Assembly: GCF_001194135.2 (NCBI RefSeq)
Contig: NC_068998.1
Location: forward strand, 35,591,841 to 35,631,282
DNA from: Octopus bimaculoides
Lineage: Eukaryota
DNA length: 39,442 nucleotides
Direction: 5' to 3'
The position numbers and the translations under genes are program-made. This document shows, piece by piece, positions 2,290 through 39,384 of this stretch (positions within the stretch are counted from its first letter, which is position 1; every line of letters starts with the position of its first letter). The notes beneath the pieces were generated by a model. It made no database searches. It was not told the origin of the DNA and was given only the letters and a program-made list of their open reading frames with translations.

Positions 2290-4147
2290 CCCCAGAGTTT
2301 TCTACAAGTTTGCTAAAGAAACAGCTTCAATGCACTGCAGGACAGGGCCACTCCTCGAAAAAGATGGTACACTCACTGGAAACCTAATGAGGATAAGTGA
2401 AATACTAAATGAGCGATTCAAAAGTATTTTCACTCCACCCCTAGGGCACTTTCAAGTCACCAATCCAACTGACTTTTTTACCACTGCAGATGTAAAAACA
2501 GAGCCAATGATGATCGATTACATCAATATAAAGGAAGACGATGTAATAAGGGCTATAGATGAAATGAATCCAAACTCAGTTACTGGCCCAGATGGATTCC
2601 AAGCAATCCTTCTAAAAGTATGTAAGCGAGTTCGAGCAAGACCACTGCAGTCCCTCTTTCAGAGCTTCCTTGCAACTGGCAAACTTCCAAGGAAACTGAA
2701 GGAGGGTAAAATATGCCCTATTTATAAAGGATGTAGCAGAGCGGGGGTCAAGAACTACAGACCTATCTTTCTGACCTCGCACATCAGCAAGGTCATGGAA
2801 CGAATAGTCAGAAGAAAACTAATCGCCTTCCTTGAAGAAAATGACTTTCTGACACCCAACATGGTTTCCGACCAGGAAGAAGCTGCCTGAAACAGCTGCT
2901 CAACCACTCAAATGAGGAAGTGATATATCTCGACTTTGCAAAGGCCTTTGATAAAGTCGATCATGGAATGACATGTCACAAACTGCGTGATCTCGGCATA
3001 GTTGGAAAATTGGGAGAATGGCTTTCTGAAGGATAAAAGTCAGGTGGTACTAGCCAATGGGGCCACCTCCAATGACACGCAAATAGTGAGCAGTGTTCCG
3101 CAAGTCACTGTTTTGGGACCACTACTGTTCATGATGGCCCTCTCAGACATGCCCTCAGCCACACAGAGAGCCATGATCACAAGTTATGCAGATGATACAA
3201 ATGTCTCACAAATAATACAGAACCCTGAAGACACTATGCACCTGCAATGTGAGCTGGATGAAATATACAAGAGGGCTGAAAAGAATAACATGCAGTTTAA
3301 TGCTGAAAAGTTTCAAGCCTTGTGCTATCAGTATGCAAAATTNNNNNNNNNNAATGCTGAAAAGTTTCAAGCCTTGTGCTATCAGTATGCAAAATTAAAT
3401 GTAATACTCATTAAATACACTGAACCTGGAGGGATTGCAATCCCAGAGGCACAGTCAGTGCGAGACCTGGACATTTACATGAGTAATGATGCATCCTTTC
3501 ATGCGCATGTTGATAAATTGGCGGTACTTGTCTTAAGCCACTTTGACTATTGCTCTCAGCTATGGTCACCATCCAGTGTCAAATTAATCTCAGAACTTGA
3601 GGCAATCCAACGAAGCTACACGAAGAAGATAGCCTCTATGCAGCATATAAGCTACTGGGAAAAACTCAAGAGATTAAGACTCTATTCCTTAGAGCGTAGG
3701 CGAGAAATATAGGCCATAATATACATCTGGAAGATCCTGGAAGGACTTGTCCCAAACTTTGGCATCGAGAGTTACACAAATACTAGAACTGGGCGCCACT
3801 GCATAGTGCCGAAGACTCCAAATTTGCCATCAAGATGTAGGACAAGATACTGCAATAGTCTGGGCTTCAGAGGTCCACAGCTCTTCAATATCCTCCAAAA
3901 GGACCTGAAAGACTTGCATGGGGTGGATATAGGTGTCTTCAAGATGAGGTTGGACCTCTTCCTGTCAAGTGTCCCAGATGAACCAACTTCGCAGTAGGAG
4001 GTGGAGATGAGGGCACCTGCATCAAATTCTCTCATGCACCAAATGTTTATTCCTGAAAAATATTCGTGAAGTAAAATTATGTAGCAACACCAAATGGCGG
4101 TGCCACAACATGGCCACAGCTCGTGAGCTGAAACTAGATACAGTAAA

Positions 4148-4484: not shown

Positions 4485-5758
4485 NNNNNNNNNNNNNNNN
4501 NNNNNNNNNNNNNNNNNNNNNNNNNNNNNNNNNNNNNNNNNNNNNNNNNNNNNNNNNNNNNNNNNNNNNNNNNNNNNNNNNNNNNNNNNNNNNNNNNNNN
4601 NNNNNNNNNNNNNNNNNNNNNNNNNNNNNNNNNNNNNNNNNNNNNNNNNNNNNNNNNNNNNNNNNNNNNNNNNNNNNNNNNNNNNNNNNNNNNNNNNNNN
4701 NNNNNNNNNNNNNNNNNNNNNNNNNNNNNNNNNNNNNNNNNNNNNNNNNNNNNNNNNNNNNNNNNNNNNNNNNNNNNNNNNNNNNNNNNNNNNNNNNNNN
4801 NNNNNNNNNNNNNNNNNNNNNNNNNNNNNNNNNNNNNNNNNNNNNNNNNNNNNNNNNNNNNNNNNNNNNNNNNNNNNNNNNNNNNNNNNNNNNNNNNNNN
4901 NNNNNNNNNNNNNNNNNNNNNNNNNNNNNNNNNNNNNNNNNNNNNNNNNNNNNNNNNNNNNNNNNNNNNNNNNNNNNNNNNNNNNNNNNNNNNNNNNNNN
5001 NNNNNNNNNNNNNNNNNNNNNNNNNNNNNNNNNNNNNNNNNNNNNNNNNNNNNNNNNNNNNNNNNNNNNNNNNNNNNNNNNNNNNNNNNNNNNNNNNNNN
5101 NNNNNNNNNNNNNNNNNNNNNNNNNNNNNNNNNNNNNNNNNNNNNNNNNNNNNNNNNNNNNNNNNNNNNNNNNNNNNNNNNNNNNNNNNNNNNNNNNNNN
5201 NNNNNNNNNNNNNNNNNNNNNNNNNNNNNNNNNNNNNNNNNGTATGTATATATATATATACATACACACAAGTGCGCGCGCAAACATACATACTGCGACC
5301 AAGTGTAAGATGGAAATGGTCTTATGTTATTGTGACTACGCATAAGATATTGTTTCGTAGTTTCAAGTCCGTTGCAAACATTTCACTGAATCGTAGTGTA
5401 TAGTAGAATAGTTATTATAATTAGCTCTTGCTTCCTATTTTCCCGTCTATATCACAAATCGGCTTTTGATACTTCCTTGACTATTCACCGGCTTAACGAG
5501 CCTCAAGCATCTACACGACATATCAGGAAAGACGCTAATGAATGTACGTAAGGATATATATGCGTGCGTATGTTTGGTGCCTCTATTTACTGTAAAACGC
5601 CGTTGTGTCAACAACCTTACAAATCAACTACGGAAGTATCACTACAAGTTCAGCAATATACTCCAAGTGAACAACCTACGAATAGCATAACTAGATTCCA
5701 ACGTAGTTTCTTGGAGTCACGAACAGCTATCATTAAATTGCCTTATTAGAATCTCTGC

Positions 5759-5789
<31 letters not shown>

Positions 5790-6637
5790 NNNNNNNNNNN
5801 NNNNNNNNNNNNNNNNNNNNNNNNNNNNNNNNNNNNNNNNNNNNNNNNNNNNNNNNNNNNNNNNNNNNNNNNNNNNNNNNNNNNNNNNNNNNNNNNNNNN
5901 NNNNNNNNNNNNNNNNNNNNNNNNNNNNNNNNNNNNNNNNNNNNNNNNNNNNNNNNNNNNNNNNNNNNNNNNNNNNNNNNNNNNNNNNNNNNNNNNNNNN
6001 NNNNNNNNNNNNNNNNNNNNNNNNNNNNNNNNNNNNNNNNNNNNNNNNNNNNNNNNNNNNNNNNNNNNNNNNNNNNNNNNNNNNNNNNNNNNNNNNNNNN
6101 NNNNNNNNNNNNNNNNNNNNNNNNNNNNNNNNNNNNNNNNNNNNNNNNNNNNNNNNNNNNNNNNNNNNNNNNNNNNNNNNNNNNNNNNNNNNNNNNNNNN
6201 NNNNNNNNNNNNNNNNNNNNNNNNNNNNNNNNNNNNNNNNNNNNNNNNNNNNNNNNNNNNNNNNNNNNNNNNNNNNNNNNNNNNNNNNNNNNNNNNNNNN
6301 NNNNNNNNNNNNNNNNNNNNNNNNNNNNNNNNNNNNNNNNNNNNNNNNNNNNNNNNNNNNNNNNNNNNNNNNNNNNNNNNNNNNNNNNNNNNNNNNNNNN
6401 NNNNNNNNNNNNNNNNNNNNNNNNNNNNNNNNNNNNNNNNNNNNNNNNNNNNNNNNNNNNNNNNNNNNNNNNNNNNNNNNNNNNNNNNNNNNNNNNNNNN
6501 NNNNNNNNNNNNNNNNNNNNNNNNNNNNNNNNNNNNNNNNNNNNNNNNNNNNNNNNNNNNNNNNNNNNNNNNNNNNNNNNNNNNNNNNNNNNNNNNNNNN
6601 NNNNNNNNNNNNNNNNNNNNNNNNNNNNNNNNNNNNN

Positions 6638-8990: not shown

Positions 8991-10625
8991 GGAATGGTAC
9001 TTGGACAAAATCCCGCCCAGGACAAAATCCCTCCAAGACAAAATCCCTCCAAGACAAGATCCTCCACCACACCACCACCACTACCGAACAAAATCCCCCG
9101 AGCTATTGTTTTTTCTTTAGAATAAAAATATTTTAAGGAAGTGAAATTTTATTAAAAATTTTTAATTTTTAGTTGATATTTTTGTGTAAAATTTAGGAAT
9201 AGATATAATAATTGAGAAACTTCATATGAAAATGCCAAACATTTATCTAAAACGCTAAATTAAATCTAATGCCTCTAATAAAATCTAAATATGTTGTTTC
9301 TTGGTATTTTTGCACAACTGATAAGATTCGCGATGCTGCATCCTTATATTTCTTTCTCGGTGGCTTCGTAGCGATACCAGCAATAATCTGAGTCATTTGA
9401 ATATTTTGAAAATTAATTTCTCGTTCTAAAATTCTCCTAAACTTCCAGATGGCTGGATGGAAACACCCGACAAAATGATACAAAGCGCCGGCACCATCCT
9501 TCGACAGAATTATTCGTACGATGAAGTTCAGCGTTTGTTCTTGCGTTCATATTCCAAAGAGATATGCTAAATATTGGTTCTCGAAGTCCTAGTCGACATG
9601 GCCAGCCGATATAAGTATCTTCGAAGTAATCCAAAACTGGCAAAGCTTCTTCTAGCATAATATCATAGAACTTTTCAAAAGCTTTCTGAACAGATTCAGG
9701 AGGTATAAAGGCATCCTCATTTTGGGAGAAAATTCAGTATTGTCTTGATAATGCTTTTGAAAGCTAAACTCCTGCATTCTCCTATATACTTTTTGACACA
9801 AATAAAAGACGCAACCTTTAAAGTCAGTTTCAGTAAAGTGCACAAATAAAGTATTCAGCGTTTCTTTGTCAAAATCTATCATTGCACTCACAGGAGTGCA
9901 ATTTGTCAAGTCCTTTACTTCCCGAATTAATTTGTTATGAGTCATCTGAATCTTATCCGGCAAGAGTGCATAGATGCAGGGTATAGTGTGTTGATCTACT
10001 ACGACATGATTAGTATACAACTGGCTAAAAATTTCAAGAACTACTTTAAATGTTCCATCATAGCACCAACGAGGAGAGATTTTTTTTTAGAAATTCTATG
10101 CTTTTAGCCCTTCCAAATACCAAAATCATCTTACCGCCAAACGTTCATTCATGCAACAAATAATTTTCCCTATTGGCTGTTTTTTACACATATTTCAGGT
10201 ATAATAAGATCTTGAGCACATGATGAGAACGGCAAATGATTTCTTTTCTTCTGTTTATAGCGTCTTACATCTCGTCGAAGGATATGGAGGAATGGTAGTT
10301 TTGTAGCTATCTCTTCCGATATAGATGTACAAACTTCGGAGATGATTTGTTGTGTAGCCTCTTCAGTTTCTGCTGAAGGTTTTTTTAATTTCTTGAAACA
10401 CTTTTGCAGCTTCACACTTCGGTGATTTGGTGCGTGTGTGTGACTCTGTAATAGTTCGATAATCTCACCTTGCCGTATTTCTACCTTTGGTTTACATGAT
10501 TCCTTAGACCTCCGTCGTTCACATTCGTAAGATACCACATCATCTGCCAAATCTTTCTGCTTTACGTAAACATATCCCTCGTGAAATAATTTCACCTTTC
10601 CTTTGTTACTCTTCACAAGCTCCAT
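8991..10625 (-). mobile_element. MULE/Mutator DNA transposon; transposase pseudogene with FLYWCH-like N-terminus
   Basis: GYVYVK...YECERRR..C...SHTH (FLYWCH-like), WCYDGTFK...SQLYT (first D, ~10048-10059), CIYALLPDK, MIDFD, GCVFYL, YFEDTYIG, SLWN, RTNNSVEGW (E), spread over frameshifted ORFs 10170-10625, 9652-10020, 9437-9658 and 9247-9483. The left boundary is approximate. Confidence 0.85.
9003..9066. repeat. Subterminal tandem repeat, ~4 copies of 14-17 bp GACAAAATCCC(T/G)CC
   Basis: Copies at 9003, 9020, 9037 and 9053, plus a variant near 9087, just beyond the MULE stop codon. Confidence 0.85.
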
Positions 10626-10810
10626 CTTCTATGGATGGACTTTTAGTGGGTTAAAAAACACTTCAACGCCTTCAAGACAACTATATAAACCTTAAAAAAT
10701 AGATAAAACAAGCAAGCGACTGTACTACTATTTTAATAAGAAATTTTAAAAAAGTAAGGCAATTCATCAGTTTATAACGAACAAGGTAATTCATCAATTC
10801 TTCAACATTC

Positions 10811-16062: not shown

Positions 16063-16182
16063 TTGAGCAACGTGAAATAAAGTGTCTTGCTCAAGAACAC
16101 AGCACAGCCCGGTCCTGGAATCGAACTTACTACTTCATGATTGTGAGCCCGACGCGCTAACCACTGCGCCATGCGCCTTCAC
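16063..16182 (-). mobile_element. SINE family C, 5' part
   Basis: Minus strand gtgaaggcgcatggcgcagtggttagcgcgtcgggc...agttcgattccaggaccgggc...gttcttgagcaagacactttatttcacgttgc, with clear A and B boxes. Confidence 0.85.
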
Positions 16183-16192
16183 TATTTATATA

Positions 16193-16229
<37 letters not shown>

Positions 16230-16812
16230 ATGTATGTATGTATGTATGTATGTATTTATGTATGTATGTATGTATGTATGTAATACTTTAAGGGATGCTA
16301 GCATCCTAGTTCTACGGTTTATACCAGTGTTCAGTTTACAAAGGAAAATAGATATTATGATATTATTAACCCCAGGTTTCTTAAAATTGGTTATTCCGTA
16401 TCTAATAATTTACGCCAGATTATATTTTCAATTAACGAAAGAAAATTATCTAACTTTTGTAATAATTGAAATAGTAGTAAACACCATAACAGTAATACTA
16501 ATGGATTAAACGCTAGTAATGAAAGTAAATTTGAGACGTCTAGTGTACAGGGGGAAGCAACCCGTGTCAAATCCCATTACAACCTCTTGAATGTAGATAA
16601 AATGACAAGTAGCAATTATACTGAATGCTATGTGAAACTTTTTTTGTGATTGCTGGGTTAGAAGTGAATGTTTATTTAAAAATTATTGTAAATAAAAACA
16701 ATATTGTTTACAGATATAAGGTGATATTTGAGGGTAAAAGTTTCTTCTACATAGGGGCTGCGCAAAAGTTTGTTAAGAAACGCGTCTCTAACCATATTTA
16801 CACCTTTGATAA

Positions 16813-16982
16813 TGTTATATTGCAATACTACACAGTGGTTGTGTGAGCTGCGAATCCTCGTCGCCACTGTTATATTGCAATACTACACAGTGCTTGTGTG
16901 AGCTGCGAATCCTCGTCGCCACTGTTATATTGCAATACTACACAGTGGTTGTGTGAGCTGCGAATCCTCGTCGCCACTGTTA
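16813..16982. repeat. 55-bp tandem repeat x3 (plus 5 bp)
   Basis: Units start at 16813, 16868 and 16923 and differ at one base (gtggtt vs gtgctt). Unit: tgttatattgcaatactacacagtggttgtgtgagctgcgaatcctcgtcgccac. Confidence 0.97.
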
Positions 16983-16999
16983 GTATAGCAATATAACAG

Positions 17000-17069
17000 T
17001 GGCAACGAAGATGAGATTCGAACTCACGGGGGAACATCCCTTGCATTCCTCTCGGAATATATCTTCGTA
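17000..17069 (-). pseudogene. tRNA-Ser-like sequence with encoded CCA, lacking the anticodon arm
   Basis: Acceptor stem acgaag (17068-17063) pairs with cttcgt (17010-17005). A-box-like ttccgagagg, variable arm ggga-tgt-tccc, T arm gtgag-TTCGAAT-ctcat, discriminator G, then CCA. Confidence 0.65.
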
Positions 17070-17669
17070 TCGTTTCTAATAGCACCAAAAATGGAAGAGT
17101 TACTGAAAGCAGTAGCTTGAGACATAACAGATAATATAAACATGTCTTCTACCAACCTCATTAAATTTATTTGGGACTTGAATGACAAGAAAAAAGTTTT
17201 TTTCTGGAAGTGGGAGGTTATAAGCAAGGCACTGCTTATAAGCTTGGATGCTCTTTTGCTTTCTCTGTCTAGAAGAATTATTTTTGATCTTATATTCTAG
17301 GAGACGTCTCTTAAATGCTAAAATAGAGATTGGTTTTTCATGTGTTCATGTATGTAAACGAACTCTTAGAAACTACCATTAAATATATAATCATCATTGA
17401 TGCTAAACGTTAAAAAATGGTTAGTAGGTGTAATATTGATGAAAAATATATGATGGACGTTATGTCTTTTACACGTGGCAATCTATTGGTATTTTACTGT
17501 AAATTTAATAAAGCACGTTTCTTATAAATATAACGTTGAACTTCTTATAATAATGTATAAAGCTAAATTTGAGATAAAACATATTATCTTAATAGTAATT
17601 ACAACTTTAGTCTACTTAGTTTAAATATAAATTATCTATCAATAGTATCTGGTAATGTCCAAGTTTTGC

Positions 17670-17885
17670 TTTTACTCTTTTACTCTTTTACTTGTGTCAG
17701 TCATTTGACTGTGGCCATGCTGGAGCACCGCCTTTAGTCGAGCAAATCGACCCCAGGACTTATTCTTTGTAAGCCTAGTACTTATTCTATCGGTCCCTTT
17801 TGCCGAACCGTTAAGTTACGGTGACGTAAACACACCAGCACTGGTTGTCAAGCGATGTTGGGGGGGGACAAACACAGACACACAA

Positions 17886-17918: not shown

Positions 17919-18376
17919 NNNNNNNNNNNNNNNNNNNNNNNNNNNNNNNNNNNNNNNNNNNNNNNNNNNNNNNNNNNNNNNNNNNNNNNNNNNNNNNNNN
18001 NNNNNNNNNNNNNNNNNNNNNNNNNNNNNNNNNNNNNNNNNNNNNNNNNNNNNNNNNNNNNNNNNNNNNNNNNNNNNNNNNNNNNNNNNNNNNNNNNNNN
18101 NNNNNNNNNNNNNNNNNNNNNNNNNNNNNNNNNNNNNNNNNNNNNNNNNNNNNNNNNNNNNNNNNNNNNNNNNNNNNNNNNNNNNNNNNNNNNNNNNNNN
18201 NNNNNNNNNNNNNNNNNNNNNNNNNNNNNNNNNNNNNNNNNNNNNNNNNNNNNNNNNNNNNNNNNNNNNNNNNNNNNNNNNNNNNNNNNNNNNNNNNNNN
18301 NNNNNNNNNNNNNNNNNNNNNNNNNNNNNNNNNNNNNNNNNNNNNNNNNNNNNNNNNNNNNNNNNNNNNNNNNNNN

Positions 18377-19674: not shown

Positions 19675-20455
19675 CGAGGTGGTATCAAAACGTTCCTGGA
19701 CTAGTTATGTTTAATAAAAAATAACTTATTTACCTAAGTTTTAATACCATCTCCTTCAAAATAGTTATCTTGCGCAGCAATACACCGGTCCCAGCGTTCC
19801 TGACACTTTTGGAATCCGGCCTGGAAGTCGTTTTTCGTGAGTCGAAGACCTTCTGCGATTTGTTCTTGATCACGACAACGGTGTTAAAACGGTGACCTTT
19901 GAGCTGCATTTTCGTCTTATGAAAGAGATGTAAGTCCACAGGTGCTAAATCTGGCGAATAGGGCGGGTGCAGAAGGGATACATAAACATCCTTGATTGTC
20001 CTCAAACGATCCTCATGCAAACTTGATGAATTTTCTCTACATTTCCGGGATTGACACTCAAGACAAGCCTTCCAGATCGCTCATCGTTTTCCAGAGATGT
20101 TGTTCCACTTTTGAAGCGCTCGTGCCACTCGAAACATTGCGTACAACCCATTGCCTCGTCTCCGTAAGTTTGCTGGAGTACATTCAATGTAACTGTAGCA
20201 GACTTCCCAAGTTTAACGCAAAATTTCGCGTTGGCTCTTTGTCCCAACTTCCTGTCTATGACAAGAATCGCACACTACAGCATACACGTGATCACAAAAA
20301 ACACTAATTTCACAACTTGCAAAGTACACATACCAATGTCACTCTGCACACTGCTCAAGAAGGACGCTACTAGCTCTCACTGCGCATGCAACAGTGTGCT
20401 GCCATCTGTTGGTGCACTTAGAGAACTAGTCCAGGAACTTTTTGATACCACTTCG
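19675..20455 (-). mobile_element. Internally deleted mariner (781 bp) with both TIRs and TA target duplication
   Basis: 32-bp TIRs match at 30/32 (19675-19706, 20424-20455) with TA on both sides. N-terminus MGQRANAKFCVKLGKSAT...YGDEAM...FEWHERF...DERSGR is joined to C-terminal HPPYSPDLAPVD...LKGHRF; the middle of the catalytic domain is missing. Confidence 0.95.
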
Positions 20456-23109: not shown

Positions 23110-24102
23110 NNNNNNNNNNNNNNNNNNNNNNNNNNNNNNNNNNNNNNNNNNNNNNNNNNNNNNNNNNNNNNNNNNNNNNNNNNNNNNNNNNNNNNNNNNN
23201 NNNNNNNNNNNNNNNNNNNNNNNNNNNNNNNNNNNNNNNNNNNNNNNNNNNNNNNNNNNNNNNNNNNNNNNNNNNNNNNNNNNNNNNNNNNNNNNNNNNN
23301 NNNNNNNNNNNNNNNNNNNNNNNNNNNNNNNNNNNNNNNNNNNNNNNNNNNNNNNNNNNNNNNNNNNNNNNNNNNNNNNNNNNNNNNNNNNNNNNNNNNN
23401 NNNNNNNNNNNNNNNNNNNNNNNNNNNNNNNNNNNNNNNNNNNNNNNNNNNNNNNNNNNNNNNNNNNNNNNNNNNNNNNNNNNNNNNNNNNNNNNNNNNN
23501 NNNNNNNNNNNNNNNNNNNNNNNNNNNNNNNNNNNNNNNNNNNNNNNNNNNNNNNNNNNNNNNNNNNNNNNNNNNNNNNNNNNNNNNNNNNNNNNNNNNN
23601 NNNNNNNNNNNNNNNNNNNNNNNNNNNNNNNNNNNNNNNNNNNNNNNNNNNNNNNNNNNNNNNNNNNNNNNNNNNNNNNNNNNNNNNNNNNNNNNNNNNN
23701 NNNNNNNNNNNNNNNNNNNNNNNNNNNNNNNNNNNNNNNNNNNNNNNNNNNNNNNNNNNNNNNNNNNNNNNNNNNNNNNNNNNNNNNNNNNNNNNNNNNN
23801 NNNNNNNNNNNNNNNNNNNNNNNNNNNNNNNNNNNNNNNNNNNNNNNNNNNNNNNNNNNNNNNNNNNNNNNNNNNNNNNNNNNNNNNNNNNNNNNNNNNN
23901 NNNNNNNNNNNNNNNNNNNNNNNNNNNNNNNNNNNNNNNNNNNNNNNNNNNNNNNNNNNNNNNNNNNNNNNNNNNNNNNNNNNNNNNNNNNNNNNNNNNN
24001 NNNNNNNNNNNNNNNNNNNNNNNNNNNNNNNNNNNNNNNNNNNNNNNNNNNNNNNNNNNNNNNNNNNNNNNNNNNNNNNNNNNNNNNNNNNNNNNNNNNN
24101 NN

Positions 24103-25104: not shown

Positions 25105-25434
25105 TTTTGTTTTACTCTTTCATTTGTTTCAGTCATTTGACTGCGGCCATGCTGGAGCACCGCATTTAGTCGAGCAAATCGACCCCAGGACTTATTCTGT
25201 GTAAGCCTAGTAATTATTTTATCGGCCCCTTTTGCCGAACCGTTAAGTTACGGGAACGTAAACACACCATCATCGGTTGTCAAGCGATGTTGGGGGACAA
25301 ACACAGACACACAAACACACACGCACACACATATATATATATACATATACATATATATGACGGGCTTCTTTCAGTTTCCGTCTACCAAATCCACTCTCAA
25401 GGCTTTGGTCGGCCGGAGGCTATAGTAAACACTT
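25105..25434 (-). mobile_element. SINE family A lacking most of the tRNA head
   Basis: Continuous match from the tail (ttttactc) through cagtcatttgactgcggccatgctggagcaccgc and the internal CA/TA repeat to gacgggcttctttcagtttccgtctaccaaatccac...gaggctatagt. Confidence 0.92.
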
Positions 25435-29334: not shown

Positions 29335-30345
29335 TCACTAATTTGACGCTTTGTTTTTGGCAGTCCAGAGCCAGACTCTTGCGAATGTTTGTCTCCCATG
29401 GCCAAAACTTGATCCTGTAAAAAGATTTACAGAGAACTGAATATTGATATCTGGGTTTACCTATTGAGCTGCATACTTTAAGTCTTCAGCCATGTCCTCG
29501 TGATGTTTCATCCAAAGGTGTAAGAGACTGCCAAGTTGACACATGTTCAGTATAATTGCAAAAAGGTTACGGAGTTTCCTTGGAGAATCTGATATTGATG
29601 CTTCTGTTCATGCAAGGTCCCAATCTTCATCACTTTCTAAAAAGGACCTTGTTGAAAGCATACTTCCTTATAATTTTCACACACATAACATCCACCTTTC
29701 TTGAATCTTGGAATGATTTGGGACCACGTACTTCATGCAAAAAGAGGAGTAAGTAGTAGCATTCTGCTTGGCTTGGGGGGGGGGAAGACACTGTAAACTC
29801 TTGCATGAGCATCAGCCCCACATTTCCTCTTGTGCCATTTATTGCTTCTCCAAGTGTAATTCTTGTGCAGCTGTAGTTAAAGGAGTTTTCTTGCATCTTC
29901 TTCTACTTGACACAACTTTAAAAAGACAGTGATGGTAGTTTCTTTTGAAGAAAATGCTTGTTGCAAGGTTGTTTGTTTTCTAAAGATAACCCTGTTGTCA
30001 TTCTCTAGATGGACACTCAGATGAATGATGGCTGGGTGCCTCTCTTGAATGGGAAAATTGAAGATGCGCCTAAAAGTCTCATTAGTACTAATGCATCCTC
30101 CTCTGTCATATTGTGCATCTTCATCATTTTTATTTATCTGCTGACTGCCGTTCTGCATAAGAGCGTATGTTGCAGCATCTAAACCTTTGTTTATATATTT
30201 GCAAACATACTTGATAGAGTTAACAGAGTTGCAGACTCCAGCATTGATTCTGGCTACCTGTACTTATCTTTGCTTCACAGTAGAATACTGATTAACTTCA
30301 TCGACCCCGTCTCCTTTTGTACAGTGAGAACATTGTTCTCGGAAA
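29335..30345 (-). mobile_element. Helitron RepHel pseudogene fragment (end of Rep domain and linker)
   Basis: INAGVCNSVNSIKYVCKYINKG (two-Tyr motif, ~30195-30212), RIFNFPIQERHPAIIHLSVHLEN, TTITVFLKLCQ, ECYYLLLFLHEVRGPKSFQD, PRKLRNLFAIIL, LWMKHHEDMAED. Multiple stops and frameshifts. Confidence 0.9.
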
Positions 30346-31274: not shown

Positions 31275-31401
31275 TGGCAAAAGAGACCGATAGAATAAGT
31301 ACTAGGCTTCCAAATAATAAGTCCTGGGATGGATTTGATCGACTAAAGGCGGTGCTCCAGCATGGCCGCAGTCAAATGACTGAAACAAGGAAAAAGAGTA
31401 A
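31275..31401 (+). mobile_element. SINE family A 3' part
   Basis: ggcaaaagagaccgatagaataagtactaggctt...gactaaaggcggtgctccagcatggccgcagtcaaatgactgaaacaag...aaagagtaa. Confidence 0.92.
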
Positions 31402-32041
31402 CAACATAAACAAGATCTGTCACCAGTCCTACACTTCCACTTCACTCTAATCATTATCATCATCATCATCACCATCACCAACATCATTAGCAGCAGCATC
31501 ATTACCCTAATCGTCATCGTCGTCATCATCATCCCATCGTAAAACCATCTTTGTCATTAATAAATATGTAAAAAGTATAAAGGAAAAGGAATACAAGTGT
31601 GTGCGTGTGCGTATGGGTACGTGTGTATACGAAATTGTTTTATGTTCAATGTATGTCTTCGTAAGTGTGCATATATATATATATATATATATANNNNNNN
31701 NNNNNNNNNNNNNNNNNNNNNNNNNNNNNNNNNNNNNNNNNNNNNNNNNNNNNNNNNNNNNNNNNNNNNNNNNNNNNNNNNNNNNNNNNNNNNNNNNNNN
31801 NNNNNNNNNNNNNNNNNNNNNNNNNNNNNNNNNNNNNNNNNNNNNNNNNNNNNNNNNNNNNNNNNNNNNNNNNNNNNNNNNNNNNNNNNNNNNNNNNNNN
31901 NNNNNNNNNNNNNNNNNNNNNNNNNNNNNNNNNNNNNNNNNNNNNNNNNNNNNNNNNNNNNNNNNNNNNNNNNNNNNNNNNNNNNNNNNNNNNNNNNNNN
32001 NNNNNNNNNNNNNNNNNNNNNNNNNNNNNNNNNNNNNNNNN

Positions 32042-37685: not shown

Positions 37686-39384
37686 ATAAAGTTTTGTATT
37701 AAAAAATAATAATAATCGATGGTAGTCAATTGATGTTGATCAAGATTTTCTGCATTTTCTGCTTAATTTAAATTTGCATATACATACATACATACATACA
37801 TANNNNNNNNNNNNNNNNNNNNNNNNNNNNNNNNNNNNNNNNNNNNNNNNNNNNNNNNNNNNNNNNNNNNNNNNNNNNNNNNNNNNNNNNNNNNNNNNNN
37901 NNNNNNNNNNNNNNNNNNNNNNNNNNNNNNNNNNNNNNNNNNNNNNNNNNNNNNNNNNNNNNNNNNNNNNNNNNNNNNNNNNNNNNNNNNNNNNNNNNNN
38001 NNNNNNNNNNNNNNNNNNNNNNNNNNNNNNNNNNNNNNNNNNNNNNNNNNNNNNNNNNNNNNNNNNNNNNNNNNNNNNNNNNNNNNNNNNNNNNNNNNNN
38101 NNNNNNNNNNNNNNNNNNNNNNNNNNNNNNNNNNNNNNNNNNNNNNNNNNNNNNNNNNNNNNNNNNNNNNNNNNNNNNNNNNNNNNNNNNNNNNNNNNNN
38201 NNNNNNNNNNNNNNNNNNNNNNNNNNNNNNNNNNNNNNNNNNNNNNNNNNNNNNNNNNNNNNNNNNNNNNNNNNNNNNNNNNNNNNNNNNNNNNNNNNNN
38301 NNNNNNNNNNNNNNNNNNNNNNNNNNNNNNNNNNNNNNNNNNNNNNNNNNNNNNNNNNNNNNNNNNNNNNNNNNNNNNNNNNNNNNNNNNNNNNNNNNNN
38401 NNNNNNNNNNNNNNNNNNNNNNNNNNNNNNNNNNNNNNNNNNNNNNNNNNNNNNNNNNNNNNNNNNNNNNNNNNNNNNNNNNNNNNNNNNNNNNNNNNNN
38501 NNNNNNNNNNNNNNNNNNNNNNNNNNNNNNNNNNNNNNNNNNNNNNNNNNNNNNNNNNNNNNNNNNNNNNNNNNNNNNNNNNNNNNNNNNNNNNNNNNNN
38601 NNNNNNNNNNNNNNNNNNNNNNNNNNNNNNNNNNNNNNNNNNNNNNNNNNNNNNNNNNNNNNNNNNNNNNNNNNNNNNNNNNNNNNNNNNNNNNNNNNNN
38701 NNNNNNNNNNNNNNNNNNNNNNNNNNNNNNNNNNNNNNNNNNNNNNNNNNNNNNNNNNNNNNNNNNNNNNNNNNNNNNNNNNNNNNNNNNNNNNNNNNTA
38801 TATATATATATATATGTATACACGAATGAGTGGACAAACGAAACAAAAGGGCATTTAACACATTTAGTAGGAGTTACAAGTATTATTTAAAGCAGTTTTA
38901 TTTGGTTCCATGCGGCTTAAGTTTCGCAGACCCCTAAGAGAACCCTATCTCTTTCAGGCTTGAGCAAACTGTTTTAAATGTGTGTGTGTGTGCGCGCGCG
39001 CGCATCCATGTATGTGTCGCAATTTTGCAGTTTATGATATAGTTTGTGATGAGTGTCATGCACAAAACTTGCGGGCGTTGGATTATTTAGATTCACAGTT
39101 AAATAATATTTGCGCGCGCATGTGGTGGGGTGCGTGCATGCCGTAATTTGAAAGGTCAAGCAAAGAGAAGACATAGTCATATAGACAAGAGTCATTCAGA
39201 CAAACGCATTAATGTTACTATTTCTAATAGAAGTTCTGTATGTAACAGAAGTACATACACACGTACACACACCGATGCTCGCACGCGCGCACACACGCAC
39301 ATAAGCACATAAAGGACATATGATCCAATGCGCACTCGTTTACATACGCACATACAAGTTGAGAGAAAGATGTATCTGTGGGCT

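What the first reader, a model, noticed from the sequence alone, without database searches (positions are those of the whole stretch)
16813..17129. TSD-flanked LTR/TRIM-like mini-element carrying both a CCA-ended tRNA-Ser mimic and a PBS for that tRNA (possible self-priming or Pol III-driven element)
Seen in sequence: a 317-bp insert splits a Penelope GIY-YIG domain, and removing it plus one GATAA copy restores the frame (NHIYTF-DNINM-SSTNL). It has a 5-bp TSD and TGTTAT...ATAACA ends. On the minus strand, a 152-bp TG...CA block (17129-16978) contains a tRNA-Ser-like sequence ending in CCA. One nucleotide later comes TGGCGACGAGGAT, and the short AACA-g-PBS junction recurs in tandem. The tRNA-like 3' end and the PBS are near-perfect inverted repeats (16969-16982 vs 16994-17007, 13/14). 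Established: 4-6-bp TSDs with TG...CA ends mark LTR-integrase insertions; TGGCGACGAG is a common tRNA-Ser(GCU) PBS in animal Gypsy elements; eukaryotic tRNA genes normally do not encode CCA; Cassandra-type TRIMs (5S) and, as I recall, Helenus/Ajax carry small-RNA-gene parts in their LTRs; Tf1 self-primes. Inference: a non-autonomous LTR family whose LTR captured a reverse-transcribed copy of its own primer tRNA. This could give it an internal Pol III promoter and a fold-back primer in cis. I know of no such cephalopod family.
Basis: partly seen in the sequence, partly recalled or inferred. Interest (0 to 1): 0.72.

Follow-up and report, generated by a model that had tools for sequence, protein, structure and literature searches.

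The report
tRNA-Ser-derived mini mobile element insertion
A 317-base mobile-element insertion with the footprint of a retrovirus-type integrase is built from mirror-image modules copied from a mature serine tRNA; it resembles, but does not fit, the known tRNA-carrying miniature LTR elements, and I could not test whether it is a repeated family.

Summary
The sequence facts hold. A 317-bp insert (16813-17129) with TGTTAT...ATAACA ends and a 5-bp GATAA duplication splits a Penelope-type GIY-YIG nuclease ORF. Removing it restores a frame that 87 genuine homologues cross in one stretch.

The insert is not a two-LTR TRIM. It has no second LTR and no polypurine tract. It consists of inverted modules, each running from a TGTTAT terminus to a tRNA-Ser(GCU)-derived 3' end plus CCA plus C. 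They are three 55-bp skeleton modules on the + strand and one 131-nt module on the - strand, meeting at a 21-bp palindrome. The 131-nt module holds a fuller tRNA-like sequence that lacks the anticodon arm.

The fourfold CCA-C-TGTTA junction is the reverse complement of an LTR-end/1-nt/tRNA-Ser PBS junction. An identical 11-nt PBS is reported in two bivalve Helenus TRIMs.

Best reading: a non-autonomous, integrase-inserted element descended from a primer-tRNA/LTR-end cDNA junction.

Pol III drive and self-priming are untested. A T5 run and a 60-nt leader upstream of the tRNA-like part argue against simple Pol III propagation.

No second copy could be reached, because the source genome was not searchable. 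Interest is moderate.

The parts
16808..16812 (.). Left copy of the target-site duplication, GATAA (6 bp, GATAAT, if 16813 is counted)
17130..17134 (.). Right copy of the target-site duplication, GATAA
16813..17129 (.). Whole 317-bp insert with TGTTAT...ATAACA ends. It is the only copy in the window.
16813..16977 (+). Three tandem 55-bp modules (16813-67, 16868-922, 16923-77). Each is a 20-bp near-palindrome L (TGTTATATTGCAATACTACA), then a 34-nt skeleton of tRNA-Ser(GCU) ending CCTCGTCGCCA, then C. One substitution in 165 bp.
16843..16866 (-). PBS-like 24-mer TGGCGACGAGGATTCGCAGCTCAC, copy 1. It is the reverse complement of the module's tRNA 3' end and sits 1 nt after ...TAACA.
16898..16921 (-). 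PBS-like 24-mer, copy 2
16953..16976 (-). PBS-like 24-mer, copy 3. It pairs with the tRNA-like 3' end at 17012-17000: 13/13 as - strand RNA, including two G.U pairs.
16978..16998 (.). Central 21-bp palindromic block L' (TGTTAGTATAGCAATATAACA) shared by the converging modules. It forms the hairpin tip.
17000..17069 (-). tRNA-Ser(GCU)-like sequence lacking the anticodon arm. Acceptor stem 6/7. D-like hairpin with a partial A box (17057-17046). Variable-arm hairpin. T arm with a good B box (17025-17015). Discriminator G. Encoded CCA (17002-17000).
   Evidence: not found by ARAGORN
17070..17129 (-). 60-nt leader from the TGTTATGTCTCAAGC terminus to the tRNA-like part. It contains a T5 run (17091-17087).
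16625..16812 (+). Upstream half of the interrupted Penelope-type GIY-YIG ORF (...VYRYKV..YIG..KRVSNHIYTFDN)
17135..17300 (+). Downstream half of the interrupted GIY-YIG ORF (INMSSTNLIKFIWDLNDK... to the stop codon)

Best explanation
This is one insertion of a short non-autonomous mobile element, placed by a retroviral-type DDE integrase. The evidence for that enzyme class is the 5-bp target duplication and the TGTTA...TAACA ends.

The element is made of modules facing each other. Each module runs from a TGTTAT terminus to a 3' end derived from tRNA-Ser(GCU), followed by CCA, one C and a roughly 20-bp near-palindrome L. There are three skeletonised 55-bp modules on the + strand. One 131-nt module on the - strand keeps a three-armed tRNA-like fold. 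The modules converge on a shared palindrome.

The fourfold junction 'tRNA 3' end-CCA / C / TGTTA' is the reverse complement of 'LTR end ...TAACA / G / TGG-PBS'. That is the joint between a primer tRNA and the first DNA made by an LTR retrotransposon. I therefore infer that the modules descend from a reverse-transcribed primer-tRNA/LTR-end junction, not from a tRNA gene. I also infer that the palindrome allowed the module to be copied in both directions, by snap-back or template switching.

The apparent 'PBS' is the mirror copy of the module. It can still pair with cellular tRNA-Ser (11 nt perfect) and with the element's own tRNA-like end.

Shown: the anatomy, the insertion and the tRNA-Ser derivation.

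Inferred: the origin from a reverse-transcription intermediate, and mobilisation in trans by an LTR-retrotransposon integrase.

Not determined: whether this is a family or a one-off integrated by-product.
For: - Insertion and restored ORF.
- Ends and TSD.
- Tandem units.
- The unit aligns to both ends of the long module, in inverted orientation, z about 4.1.
- tRNA-clan architecture without the anticodon arm.
- Cloverleaf-like minimum-free-energy fold.
- Similarity to tRNA-Ser(GCU)+CCA, z 7.5 for the long module and 5.3 for the unit, with 3'-end differences all transitions.
- 32-nt inverted repeat at 91%.
- The whole element folds at -120.6 kcal/mol, z -7.9.
- The identical 11-nt PBS TGGCGACGAGG, 1 nt after the LTR, occurs in bivalve Helenus-3/6_PiIm and is assigned to tRNA-Ser-GCT.
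Against: - Only one copy is known. There is none elsewhere in the window, and no cephalopod genome could be searched.
- There is no second LTR and no PPT, so the route by which such a DNA would be made and completed is unclear.
- The 60-nt leader upstream of the tRNA-like part is not explained by a mature-tRNA primer.
- The two arms differ by about 20%, while the tandem units are nearly identical. The inverted duplication is therefore old relative to the tandem one, and the history has several steps.
- The symmetric arm structure fits a TIR DNA transposon equally well.
Confidence: 0.45

Rival explanations
1. This is a Helenus/TRIMp3-like miniature LTR retrotransposon whose 152-bp LTR captured its own primer tRNA. 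The tRNA-like part would act as an internal Pol III promoter. After 3' processing, its CCA end would fold back on the adjacent PBS and prime reverse transcription in cis.
For: - The 152-bp block has the layout of published Helenus LTRs: TGT, a short leader, a tRNA-like part, about 20 nt, then ACA. It is followed after 1 nt by a tRNA-Ser PBS.
- The B box is intact and the A box partial.
- The tRNA-like 3' end pairs 13/13 with the PBS-like copies as - strand RNA. Both differences are G.U pairs there and C.A mismatches on the other strand. The central hairpin is -38.5 versus -26.8 kcal/mol.
Against: - There is no second LTR and no PPT.
- The 60-nt leader and a T5 run lie upstream of the tRNA-like start, and no 3' copy exists to regenerate them.
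- There is no Pol III terminator inside the element downstream of the tRNA-like part.
- The 'PBS' extends past tRNA position 58 and co-aligns with the module, so it looks like a mirror copy.
- Described Helenus show no complementarity between the tRNA-like part and the PBS, and animal ones make 4-bp TSDs.
- Only two informative differences support RNA-level pairing.
Confidence: 0.12
2. This is a MITE-like deletion derivative of a cut-and-paste DNA transposon with an integrase-related transposase (Ginger2/TDD-like). The two arms would be degenerate long TIRs, and the repeated 20-bp L blocks would be transposase-binding sites. The tRNA-derived part would be a passenger.
For: - The termini fit TGTNR.
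- The arms are inverted and alignable at both of their ends.
- Terminus-like L blocks recur subterminally.
- A 252-bp non-autonomous Ginger2 with 52-bp TIRs is known, and TDD-4/5 make 5-bp TSDs.
Against: - Metazoan Ginger2 make 4-bp TSDs and have well-matched 50-180-bp TIRs. Here the ungapped terminal match is only 10/13 and the arms are 55 versus 131 nt.
- An encoded CCA joined 1 nt from a TGTTA block, four times, is the signature of a reverse-transcription junction. A DNA-transposon history does not predict it.
Confidence: 0.2
3. This is an ordinary solo LTR of about 317 bp from a Gypsy/BEL/Copia element, left by LTR-LTR recombination. Its interior would happen to hold tandem repeats and tRNA-derived sequence.
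For: - TG...CA ends, a 5-bp TSD and a length typical of LTRs.
- Solo LTRs are the commonest LTR remnants, and Helenus solo LTRs with 5-bp TSDs are reported.
Against: - LTR-end/PBS-type junctions lie inside the element on both strands, which a solo LTR does not predict.
- I saw no TATA box or AATAAA poly(A) signal when reading either strand. This was by eye, and no scan was run.
- No internal or coding LTR-element sequence with matching ends exists anywhere in the window.
Confidence: 0.15
4. This is a LINE-mobilised tRNA-derived SINE. The tRNA-with-CCA-then-TG arrangement recalls the Ohshima/Okada proposal that some SINEs arose from primer tRNA plus strong-stop DNA.
For: - tRNA-derived sequence with CCA followed by an LTR-end-like sequence.
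- The squid SINE paper exists (reference listed in PMC9223172). Its content I cite from memory only.
Against: - The tRNA-like part is 60 nt inside the element, not at its 5' end.
- There is no simple-repeat or A-rich tail on either strand.
- The symmetric TGTTAT/ATAACA ends and a short exact 5-bp TSD point to an integrase.
- A common SINE-like repeat has three copies in this window, while this element has one.
Confidence: 0.04

Closest known systems
Helenus (TRIMp3), Kojima 2024, PMC10886601
   Same: - A short non-autonomous element with a tRNA-like sequence between a TGT... start and an ...ACA end.
- A PBS 1 nt after that block. The identical PBS, TGGCGACGAGG (tRNA-Ser-GCT), occurs in two Pinctada families.
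- Integrase-type TSD.
- Tandem arrays are reported for one family.
   Different: - Helenus has two LTRs and a PPT. This insert has neither.
- Animal Helenus make 4-bp TSDs. This one makes 5 bp.
- Helenus tRNA-like parts show no complementarity to their PBS and are followed by a T-run. Here there is 13-32 nt of complementarity, an encoded CCA and no downstream T-run.
- Among molluscs, Helenus is known only in pteriomorph bivalves.
- No shared sequence words beyond the generic B box.
Strong-stop-DNA origin of tRNA-derived SINEs (Ohshima, Koishi, Matsuo, Okada, PNAS 1993; content from my own knowledge, reference confirmed)
   Same: A tRNA-related region retaining CCA is followed directly by sequence corresponding to the LTR (U5) end. 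That is a primer-tRNA/cDNA joint fixed in the genome.
   Different: - Those are LINE-type SINEs with the tRNA at the 5' end.
- Here the joint is present four times, on both strands, inside an element with integrase-type ends and a 60-nt leader.
Ginger2/TDD non-autonomous elements (Bao, Kapitonov, Jurka 2010, PMC2836005)
   Same: - TGTNR termini.
- Small inverted-arm elements, for example the 252-bp Ginger2-1N1_NV.
- 5-bp TSDs for TDD-4/5.
   Different: - Metazoan Ginger2 make 4-bp TSDs at RTATAY targets and have 50-180-bp matched TIRs.
- No tRNA-derived content is described for them.
Tf1-type self-priming LTR retrotransposons (my own knowledge)
   Same: A stretch of the element's own RNA is complementary to its PBS and could fold back on it.
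   Different: - In Tf1 the primer is the first 11 nt of the transcript, released by RNase H.
- Here the complementary stretch is an internal tRNA-like 3' end that would need separate 3' processing.
- Nothing was tested.
Cassandra / Ajax (5S-rRNA-bearing TRIMs)
   Same: [quoted passage not shown]
   Different: - They carry 5S rather than tRNA.
- They have two LTRs, a PBS and a PPT.

Membership tests
TRIM / Helenus (TRIMp3) | Two LTRs in direct orientation | tested here: not met
   The 152-bp block (17129-16978, - strand) occurs once. The only direct repeats are the 55-bp units.
TRIM / Helenus (TRIMp3) | tRNA-like sequence with conserved A and B boxes inside the LTR | tested here: inconclusive
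   The B box GAGTTCGAATC is intact. The A box is partial (TTCCGAGAGG). The anticodon arm is missing. Rfam tRNA-Sec gives 17 bits against a gathering score of 47, and ARAGORN finds nothing.
TRIM / Helenus (TRIMp3) | PBS complementary to a tRNA just downstream of the 5' LTR | tested here: met
   TGGCGACGAGG lies 1 nt after ...TAACA, identical to the Helenus-3/6_PiIm PBS. It is part of a mirrored tRNA-derived module.
TRIM / Helenus (TRIMp3) | Polypurine tract immediately upstream of a 3' LTR | tested here: not met
   On the - strand, ACAACCAC precedes each L block. On the + strand, AAAAATGGAAGAG is 4 nt from a TG and is not followed by an LTR copy.
TRIM / Helenus (TRIMp3) | 4-bp TSD (animal Helenus) or 5-bp TSD (fungal and plant Helenus) | tested here: not met
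   The TSD is 5 bp (possibly 6) in an animal genome. It is still within the 4-6-bp range of LTR integrases.
TRIM / Helenus (TRIMp3) | Repeated family with differing TSDs; sequence relation to described families | not testable with these tools
   The source genome was not searchable. The window holds one copy. Word searches of the Helenus consensus file found only the generic B box.
Retroviral-type integrase insertion (generic LTR-element footprint) | 4-6-bp TSD with TG...CA termini in short inverted repeat | tested here: met
   GATAA on both sides, TGTTAT...ATAACA ends, and the host ORF restored on removal.
Ginger2/TDD non-autonomous DNA transposon | TGTNR termini with 50-180-bp TIRs | tested here: inconclusive
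   TGTTA fits the TGTNR pattern. The arms align only at their two ends, with z about 4.1 and a large gap. The ungapped terminal match is 10/13.
Ginger2/TDD non-autonomous DNA transposon | 4-bp TSD at RTATAY (metazoa) or 5-bp TSD (TDD-4/5) | tested here: inconclusive
   A 5-bp GATAA in an AT-rich target. This matches only the Dictyostelium members.
LINE-mobilised tRNA-derived SINE | tRNA-derived head at the 5' end and a LINE-type or simple-repeat/A-rich 3' tail | tested here: not met
   There is a 60-nt leader before the tRNA-like part and no tail on either strand.
Functional tRNA gene | Complete cloverleaf with anticodon arm; CCA not encoded | tested here: not met
   The anticodon arm is absent and CCA is encoded. 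ARAGORN gives 0 genes and Rfam is below gathering score.
Self-priming LTR retroelement (Tf1 type) | The element's own RNA supplies the primer that anneals to the PBS | not testable with these tools
   Complementarity exists: 13/13 with two G.U pairs as - strand RNA. Transcription, cleavage and priming cannot be assessed here.
Penelope-like element (the host of the insertion) | Reverse transcriptase followed by a C-terminal GIY-YIG nuclease | tested here: met
   The window holds only the GIY-YIG end. Homologues P0194 and P0177 show RT motifs followed by this domain. Pfam support is weak.

The most novel reading that the evidence does not exclude
The element may be the founder-type copy of a cephalopod family of miniature retroelements that carry their own primer. 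In this reading, a Pol III-transcribed, tRNA-Ser-derived, CCA-ended module is released by tRNA-processing enzymes. It then anneals to the mirrored PBS copies a few nucleotides away. The 20-bp palindromic L blocks would serve as minimal repeat and attachment sites for a Gypsy-type RT and integrase.
Probability: 0.1. Interest if true: 0.8.

Novelty: new variant of a known kind. Interest (0 to 1): 0.45.

Why it matters
If it proves to be a family, three things would follow.

- It would extend tRNA-bearing integrase-mobilised mini-elements (TRIMp3/Helenus) to cephalopods.
- It would do so with a different architecture: inverted modules, an encoded CCA, and complementarity between the tRNA-like end and the PBS. 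The Helenus study looked for that complementarity and did not find it.
- It would be a concrete fossil of a primer-tRNA/strong-stop junction. That bears on the old proposal that tRNA-derived retroposons can arise from reverse-transcription intermediates.

If it is a one-off, it is a curiosity: an aberrant cDNA captured by an integrase inside a dead Penelope-like element.

Tried and rejected
Routes that found no further copies:
No read or genome-wide copy test was therefore possible, and I did not try to get round that.
- The longest open frame across the element (92 aa), used as a protein query, found nothing.
- The restored GIY-YIG ORF found nothing in the word-indexed search. It did find homologues in the full HMMER scan.
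- A metagenome scan with AACAGTGGCGACGAGGATTCG gave one chance hit inside a bacterial coding gene.
- Two viral-contig scans and one prokaryote-genome scan gave nothing.
- Exact look-ups of two window ORFs are not on record.
- Loci fetched through LINE-RT homologues (L002-L004) contain no copy.

Readings considered and rejected:
- A real tRNA gene.
- microRNA or snoRNA. The Rfam hits at E 0.8-8 merely reflect the hairpins.
- TSD readings of TA, TAA or TTAA, or 8 bp, as made by Tc1/mariner, PIF, piggyBac and hAT elements. Each breaks the end symmetry or does not match.
- Transib. It also makes a 5-bp TSD, but its ends are CAC...GTG (my own knowledge).
- A two-LTR parse with the + strand as sense. 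The candidate 3' 'LTR' of 24 bp is unrelated to the 5' end.

Literature checks:
- I could not retrieve the 1993 squid SINE paper.
- No paper describing such a cephalopod element was found.
Full report
**1. What is in the sequence**

The stretch 16813-17129 (317 bp) begins TGTTAT and ends ATAACA. It is flanked on both sides by GATAA, at 16808-12 and 17130-34. The next base on each side is also T. The duplication could therefore be 6 bp, but only the 5-bp reading leaves symmetric ends.

Deleting the insert and one GATAA joins ...KRVSNHIYTFDN to INMSSTNLIKFIWDLNDK... in one frame. A full HMMER scan of 1.84 billion representatives found 88 proteins with E<=0.001. The top hit, P0121, is a repetitive DUF7507 protein and is spurious. 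The others match in a single stretch, mostly about residues 7-80, across the junction at residues 45/46.

In the alignment the restored sequence follows the consensus C..C..VY..YIG..R..NH..SFRN..ST.LSK.IW.LKD with only a one-residue gap. Two homologues of about 700 aa show reverse-transcriptase motifs (FD..FYPSI, YRDD) upstream of this C-terminal nuclease. That is the Penelope-like arrangement. Pfam on its own is weak (GIY_YIG_2, E 0.053).

The window carries only this 3' end of the host element. The insertion and its boundaries are therefore real.

**2. Anatomy of the insert**

The + strand carries 3.5 tandem 55-bp units (16813-17002) that are 98-100% identical.

The - strand, from 17069 to 17000, reads TACGAAG-AT-ATATTCCGAGAGGAATG-C-AAGGGATGTTCCCCC-GTGAGTTCGAATCTCAT-CTTCGTT-G-CCA. 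It has these properties:
- ARAGORN calls no tRNA.
- Rfam finds nothing at gathering score anywhere in the window.
- In a narrow scan the tRNA-Sec model aligns end to end at 17 bits (E 0.25). Acceptor, D, long variable and T arms are in place, and the anticodon arm is replaced by one nucleotide.
- The isolated RNA folds into that three-armed shape (-19.3 kcal/mol).
The last 31 nt match 26/31. All five differences are G>A or C>T. A 17-nt gap removes the anticodon stem-loop.

The sequence is thus a decayed copy of a class-II serine tRNA with an encoded CCA.

**3. The 'PBS' is a mirror copy of the same module**

TGGCGACGAGGATTCG occurs three times on the - strand, each 1 nt after ...TAACA. The chance expectation is 0.05.

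The 55-bp unit on the + strand aligns to both ends of the 131-nt - strand module (17129-16999). The first ~20 nt align (TGTTAT.T..CAA..TACT), and so do the last ~28 nt (GTGAG.T.CGAATC....C.TCGT.GCCAC). The score is 41, against shuffles at 24.5 +/- 4.0 with a maximum of 37.9.

The unit also keeps AGTGGTT (D loop), CGAAT (T loop) and the exact CCTCGTCGCCA of tRNA-Ser(GCU) (z 5.3).

Each 55-bp unit is therefore a 20-bp near-palindrome L plus a skeleton of the same tRNA plus CCA plus C. The long module is a leader plus a fuller tRNA copy plus CCA plus C.

Three short modules read rightwards and one long module reads leftwards. They meet at a 21-bp palindrome (16978-16998). This accounts for the 32-nt, 91% inverted repeat and the very stable fold (-120.6 kcal/mol, z -7.9).

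The PBS-like copy extends into the T loop and stem, beyond tRNA position 58. A normal 18-nt PBS stops there (established knowledge of plus-strand strong-stop synthesis).

**4. What the junction means**

In all four modules the order is tRNA 3' end-CCA, one C, then TGTTA.... Read on the other strand this is ...TAACA, G, TGG-PBS. That is the border between the U5 end of an LTR and its PBS. Equivalently, it is the joint between a primer tRNA and the first DNA made from it.

Kojima's supplementary data list the identical 11-nt PBS TGGCGACGAGG, also 1 nt after the LTR. It belongs to the bivalve TRIMs Helenus-3_PiIm and Helenus-6_PiIm and is assigned to tRNA-Ser-GCT.

The element's own outer ends are versions of the same L block. 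Cephalopods carry Gypsy, Copia and BEL/Pao elements that could supply an integrase.

I infer that the modules descend from a reverse-transcribed primer-tRNA/LTR-end junction. I also infer that the palindromic L allowed copying in both orientations, by snap-back or template switching. The tandem triplication would be recent, with one change in 165 bp. The inverted copy would be older, with arms about 80-90% alike. These steps are inference and were not shown.

**5.

No second LTR exists in either orientation, and no polypurine tract sits before a 3' LTR.

The tRNA-like part begins 60 nt inside the element. A T5 run lies in that leader (17091-17087). No T4 occurs downstream within the element. 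The next one is 46 nt out in the flank, at 16767-16764. A Pol III transcript from the internal promoter would therefore lack the leader. With no 3' copy to restore it, such a transcript could not reproduce the element as found.

In favour of some RNA-level role, the tRNA-like 3' end pairs 13/13 with the PBS-like copies as - strand RNA. Both differences are G.U pairs there and C.A mismatches on the + strand. The central hairpin is -38.5 versus -26.8 kcal/mol. With only two informative sites this is a hint, not evidence.

**6. Comparison with known kinds**

Helenus/TRIMp3 (PMC10886601) is the closest described kind. It has a tRNA-like sequence within a TGT...ACA block, then a PBS. However:
- Helenus has two LTRs and a PPT.
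- Animal members make 4-bp TSDs.
- Its author looked for complementarity between the tRNA-like part and the PBS and found none.
- Among molluscs it is known only from pteriomorph bivalves.
- Word searches of its consensus file share only the generic B box with this element.

Ginger2/TDD elements share TGTNR ends and small inverted-arm derivatives. Metazoan members make 4-bp TSDs and have well-matched 50-180-bp TIRs.

A LINE-type SINE is unlikely. The tRNA-like part is internal, there is no tail, and the ends are sharp and symmetric.

The strong-stop model for SINE origin (Ohshima et al. 1993; reference confirmed, content from memory) is the closest idea for the origin of the tRNA-CCA-TG joint.

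**7. Limits**

The window holds only one copy. Protein-route and pattern searches reached no cephalopod genome. Family status, other TSDs, an autonomous partner and expression are therefore all untested. The window is a gapped draft, so the count of 55-bp units needs long-read confirmation.

**8. Verdict**

- Supported: an integrase-type insertion of a tRNA-Ser/CCA-derived element with LTR/PBS-type junctions.
- Not met: TRIM membership.
- Open: Pol III drive and self-priming.

This is a new variant of a known kind if it is a family. Interest is moderate (0.45). About a 10% chance remains for the self-primer-carrying mini-retroelement reading, which would be of high interest.

Noticed in passing
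window 17671-17759 (-), 25111-25191 (-), 31321-31410 (+); L002 1-89: A dispersed repeat of about 115 bp has three copies in the window. Its core is ...GTCCTGGGGTCGATTTGCTCGACTAAAGGCGGTGCTCCAGCATGGCCGCAGTCAAATGACTGAAACAAG, followed by an A-rich tail. One more copy lies on an ENA metagenome contig. It looks like the 3' part of a common SINE.
   Followed up: partly
L002 (ENA ERZ23499306, 796 bp) vs window 2711-3340: A metagenome contig is 76% identical at the DNA level to the window's LINE reverse-transcriptase fragment and also carries the SINE-like repeat. DNA from a related animal is therefore present in that metagenome assembly.
   Followed up: no
window 3002-3994 (+), 9250-10628 (-), 19733-20274 (-), 29880-30263 (-): The window is a mosaic of dead transposons. 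These include a jockey-like LINE RT fragment, a FLYWCH+MULE transposase and a mariner HTH fragment. A fourth ORF had no Pfam match, and I only guess that it is Helitron-like.
   Followed up: partly
window, 12 N runs (e.g. 4485-5241, 5790-6637, 17919-18376, 23110-24102, 37803-38798): There are 5,144 N in 12 gaps, one of them 790 bp downstream of the insert. This is a scaffolded draft, so tandem-repeat copy numbers may be collapsed or expanded.
   Followed up: no
window 16147-16506 and many other places: Long (TG/CA)n- and (TA)n-type microsatellites, which read as CVCVCV or YIYIYI in translation, lie immediately upstream of the Penelope-like fragment and throughout the window.
   Followed up: no
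P0121: The top hit of the HMMER scan is a 1,491-aa repetitive DUF7507 protein matched in 12 short stretches. It is a compositional or repeat artefact, not a GIY-YIG relative.
   Followed up: yes
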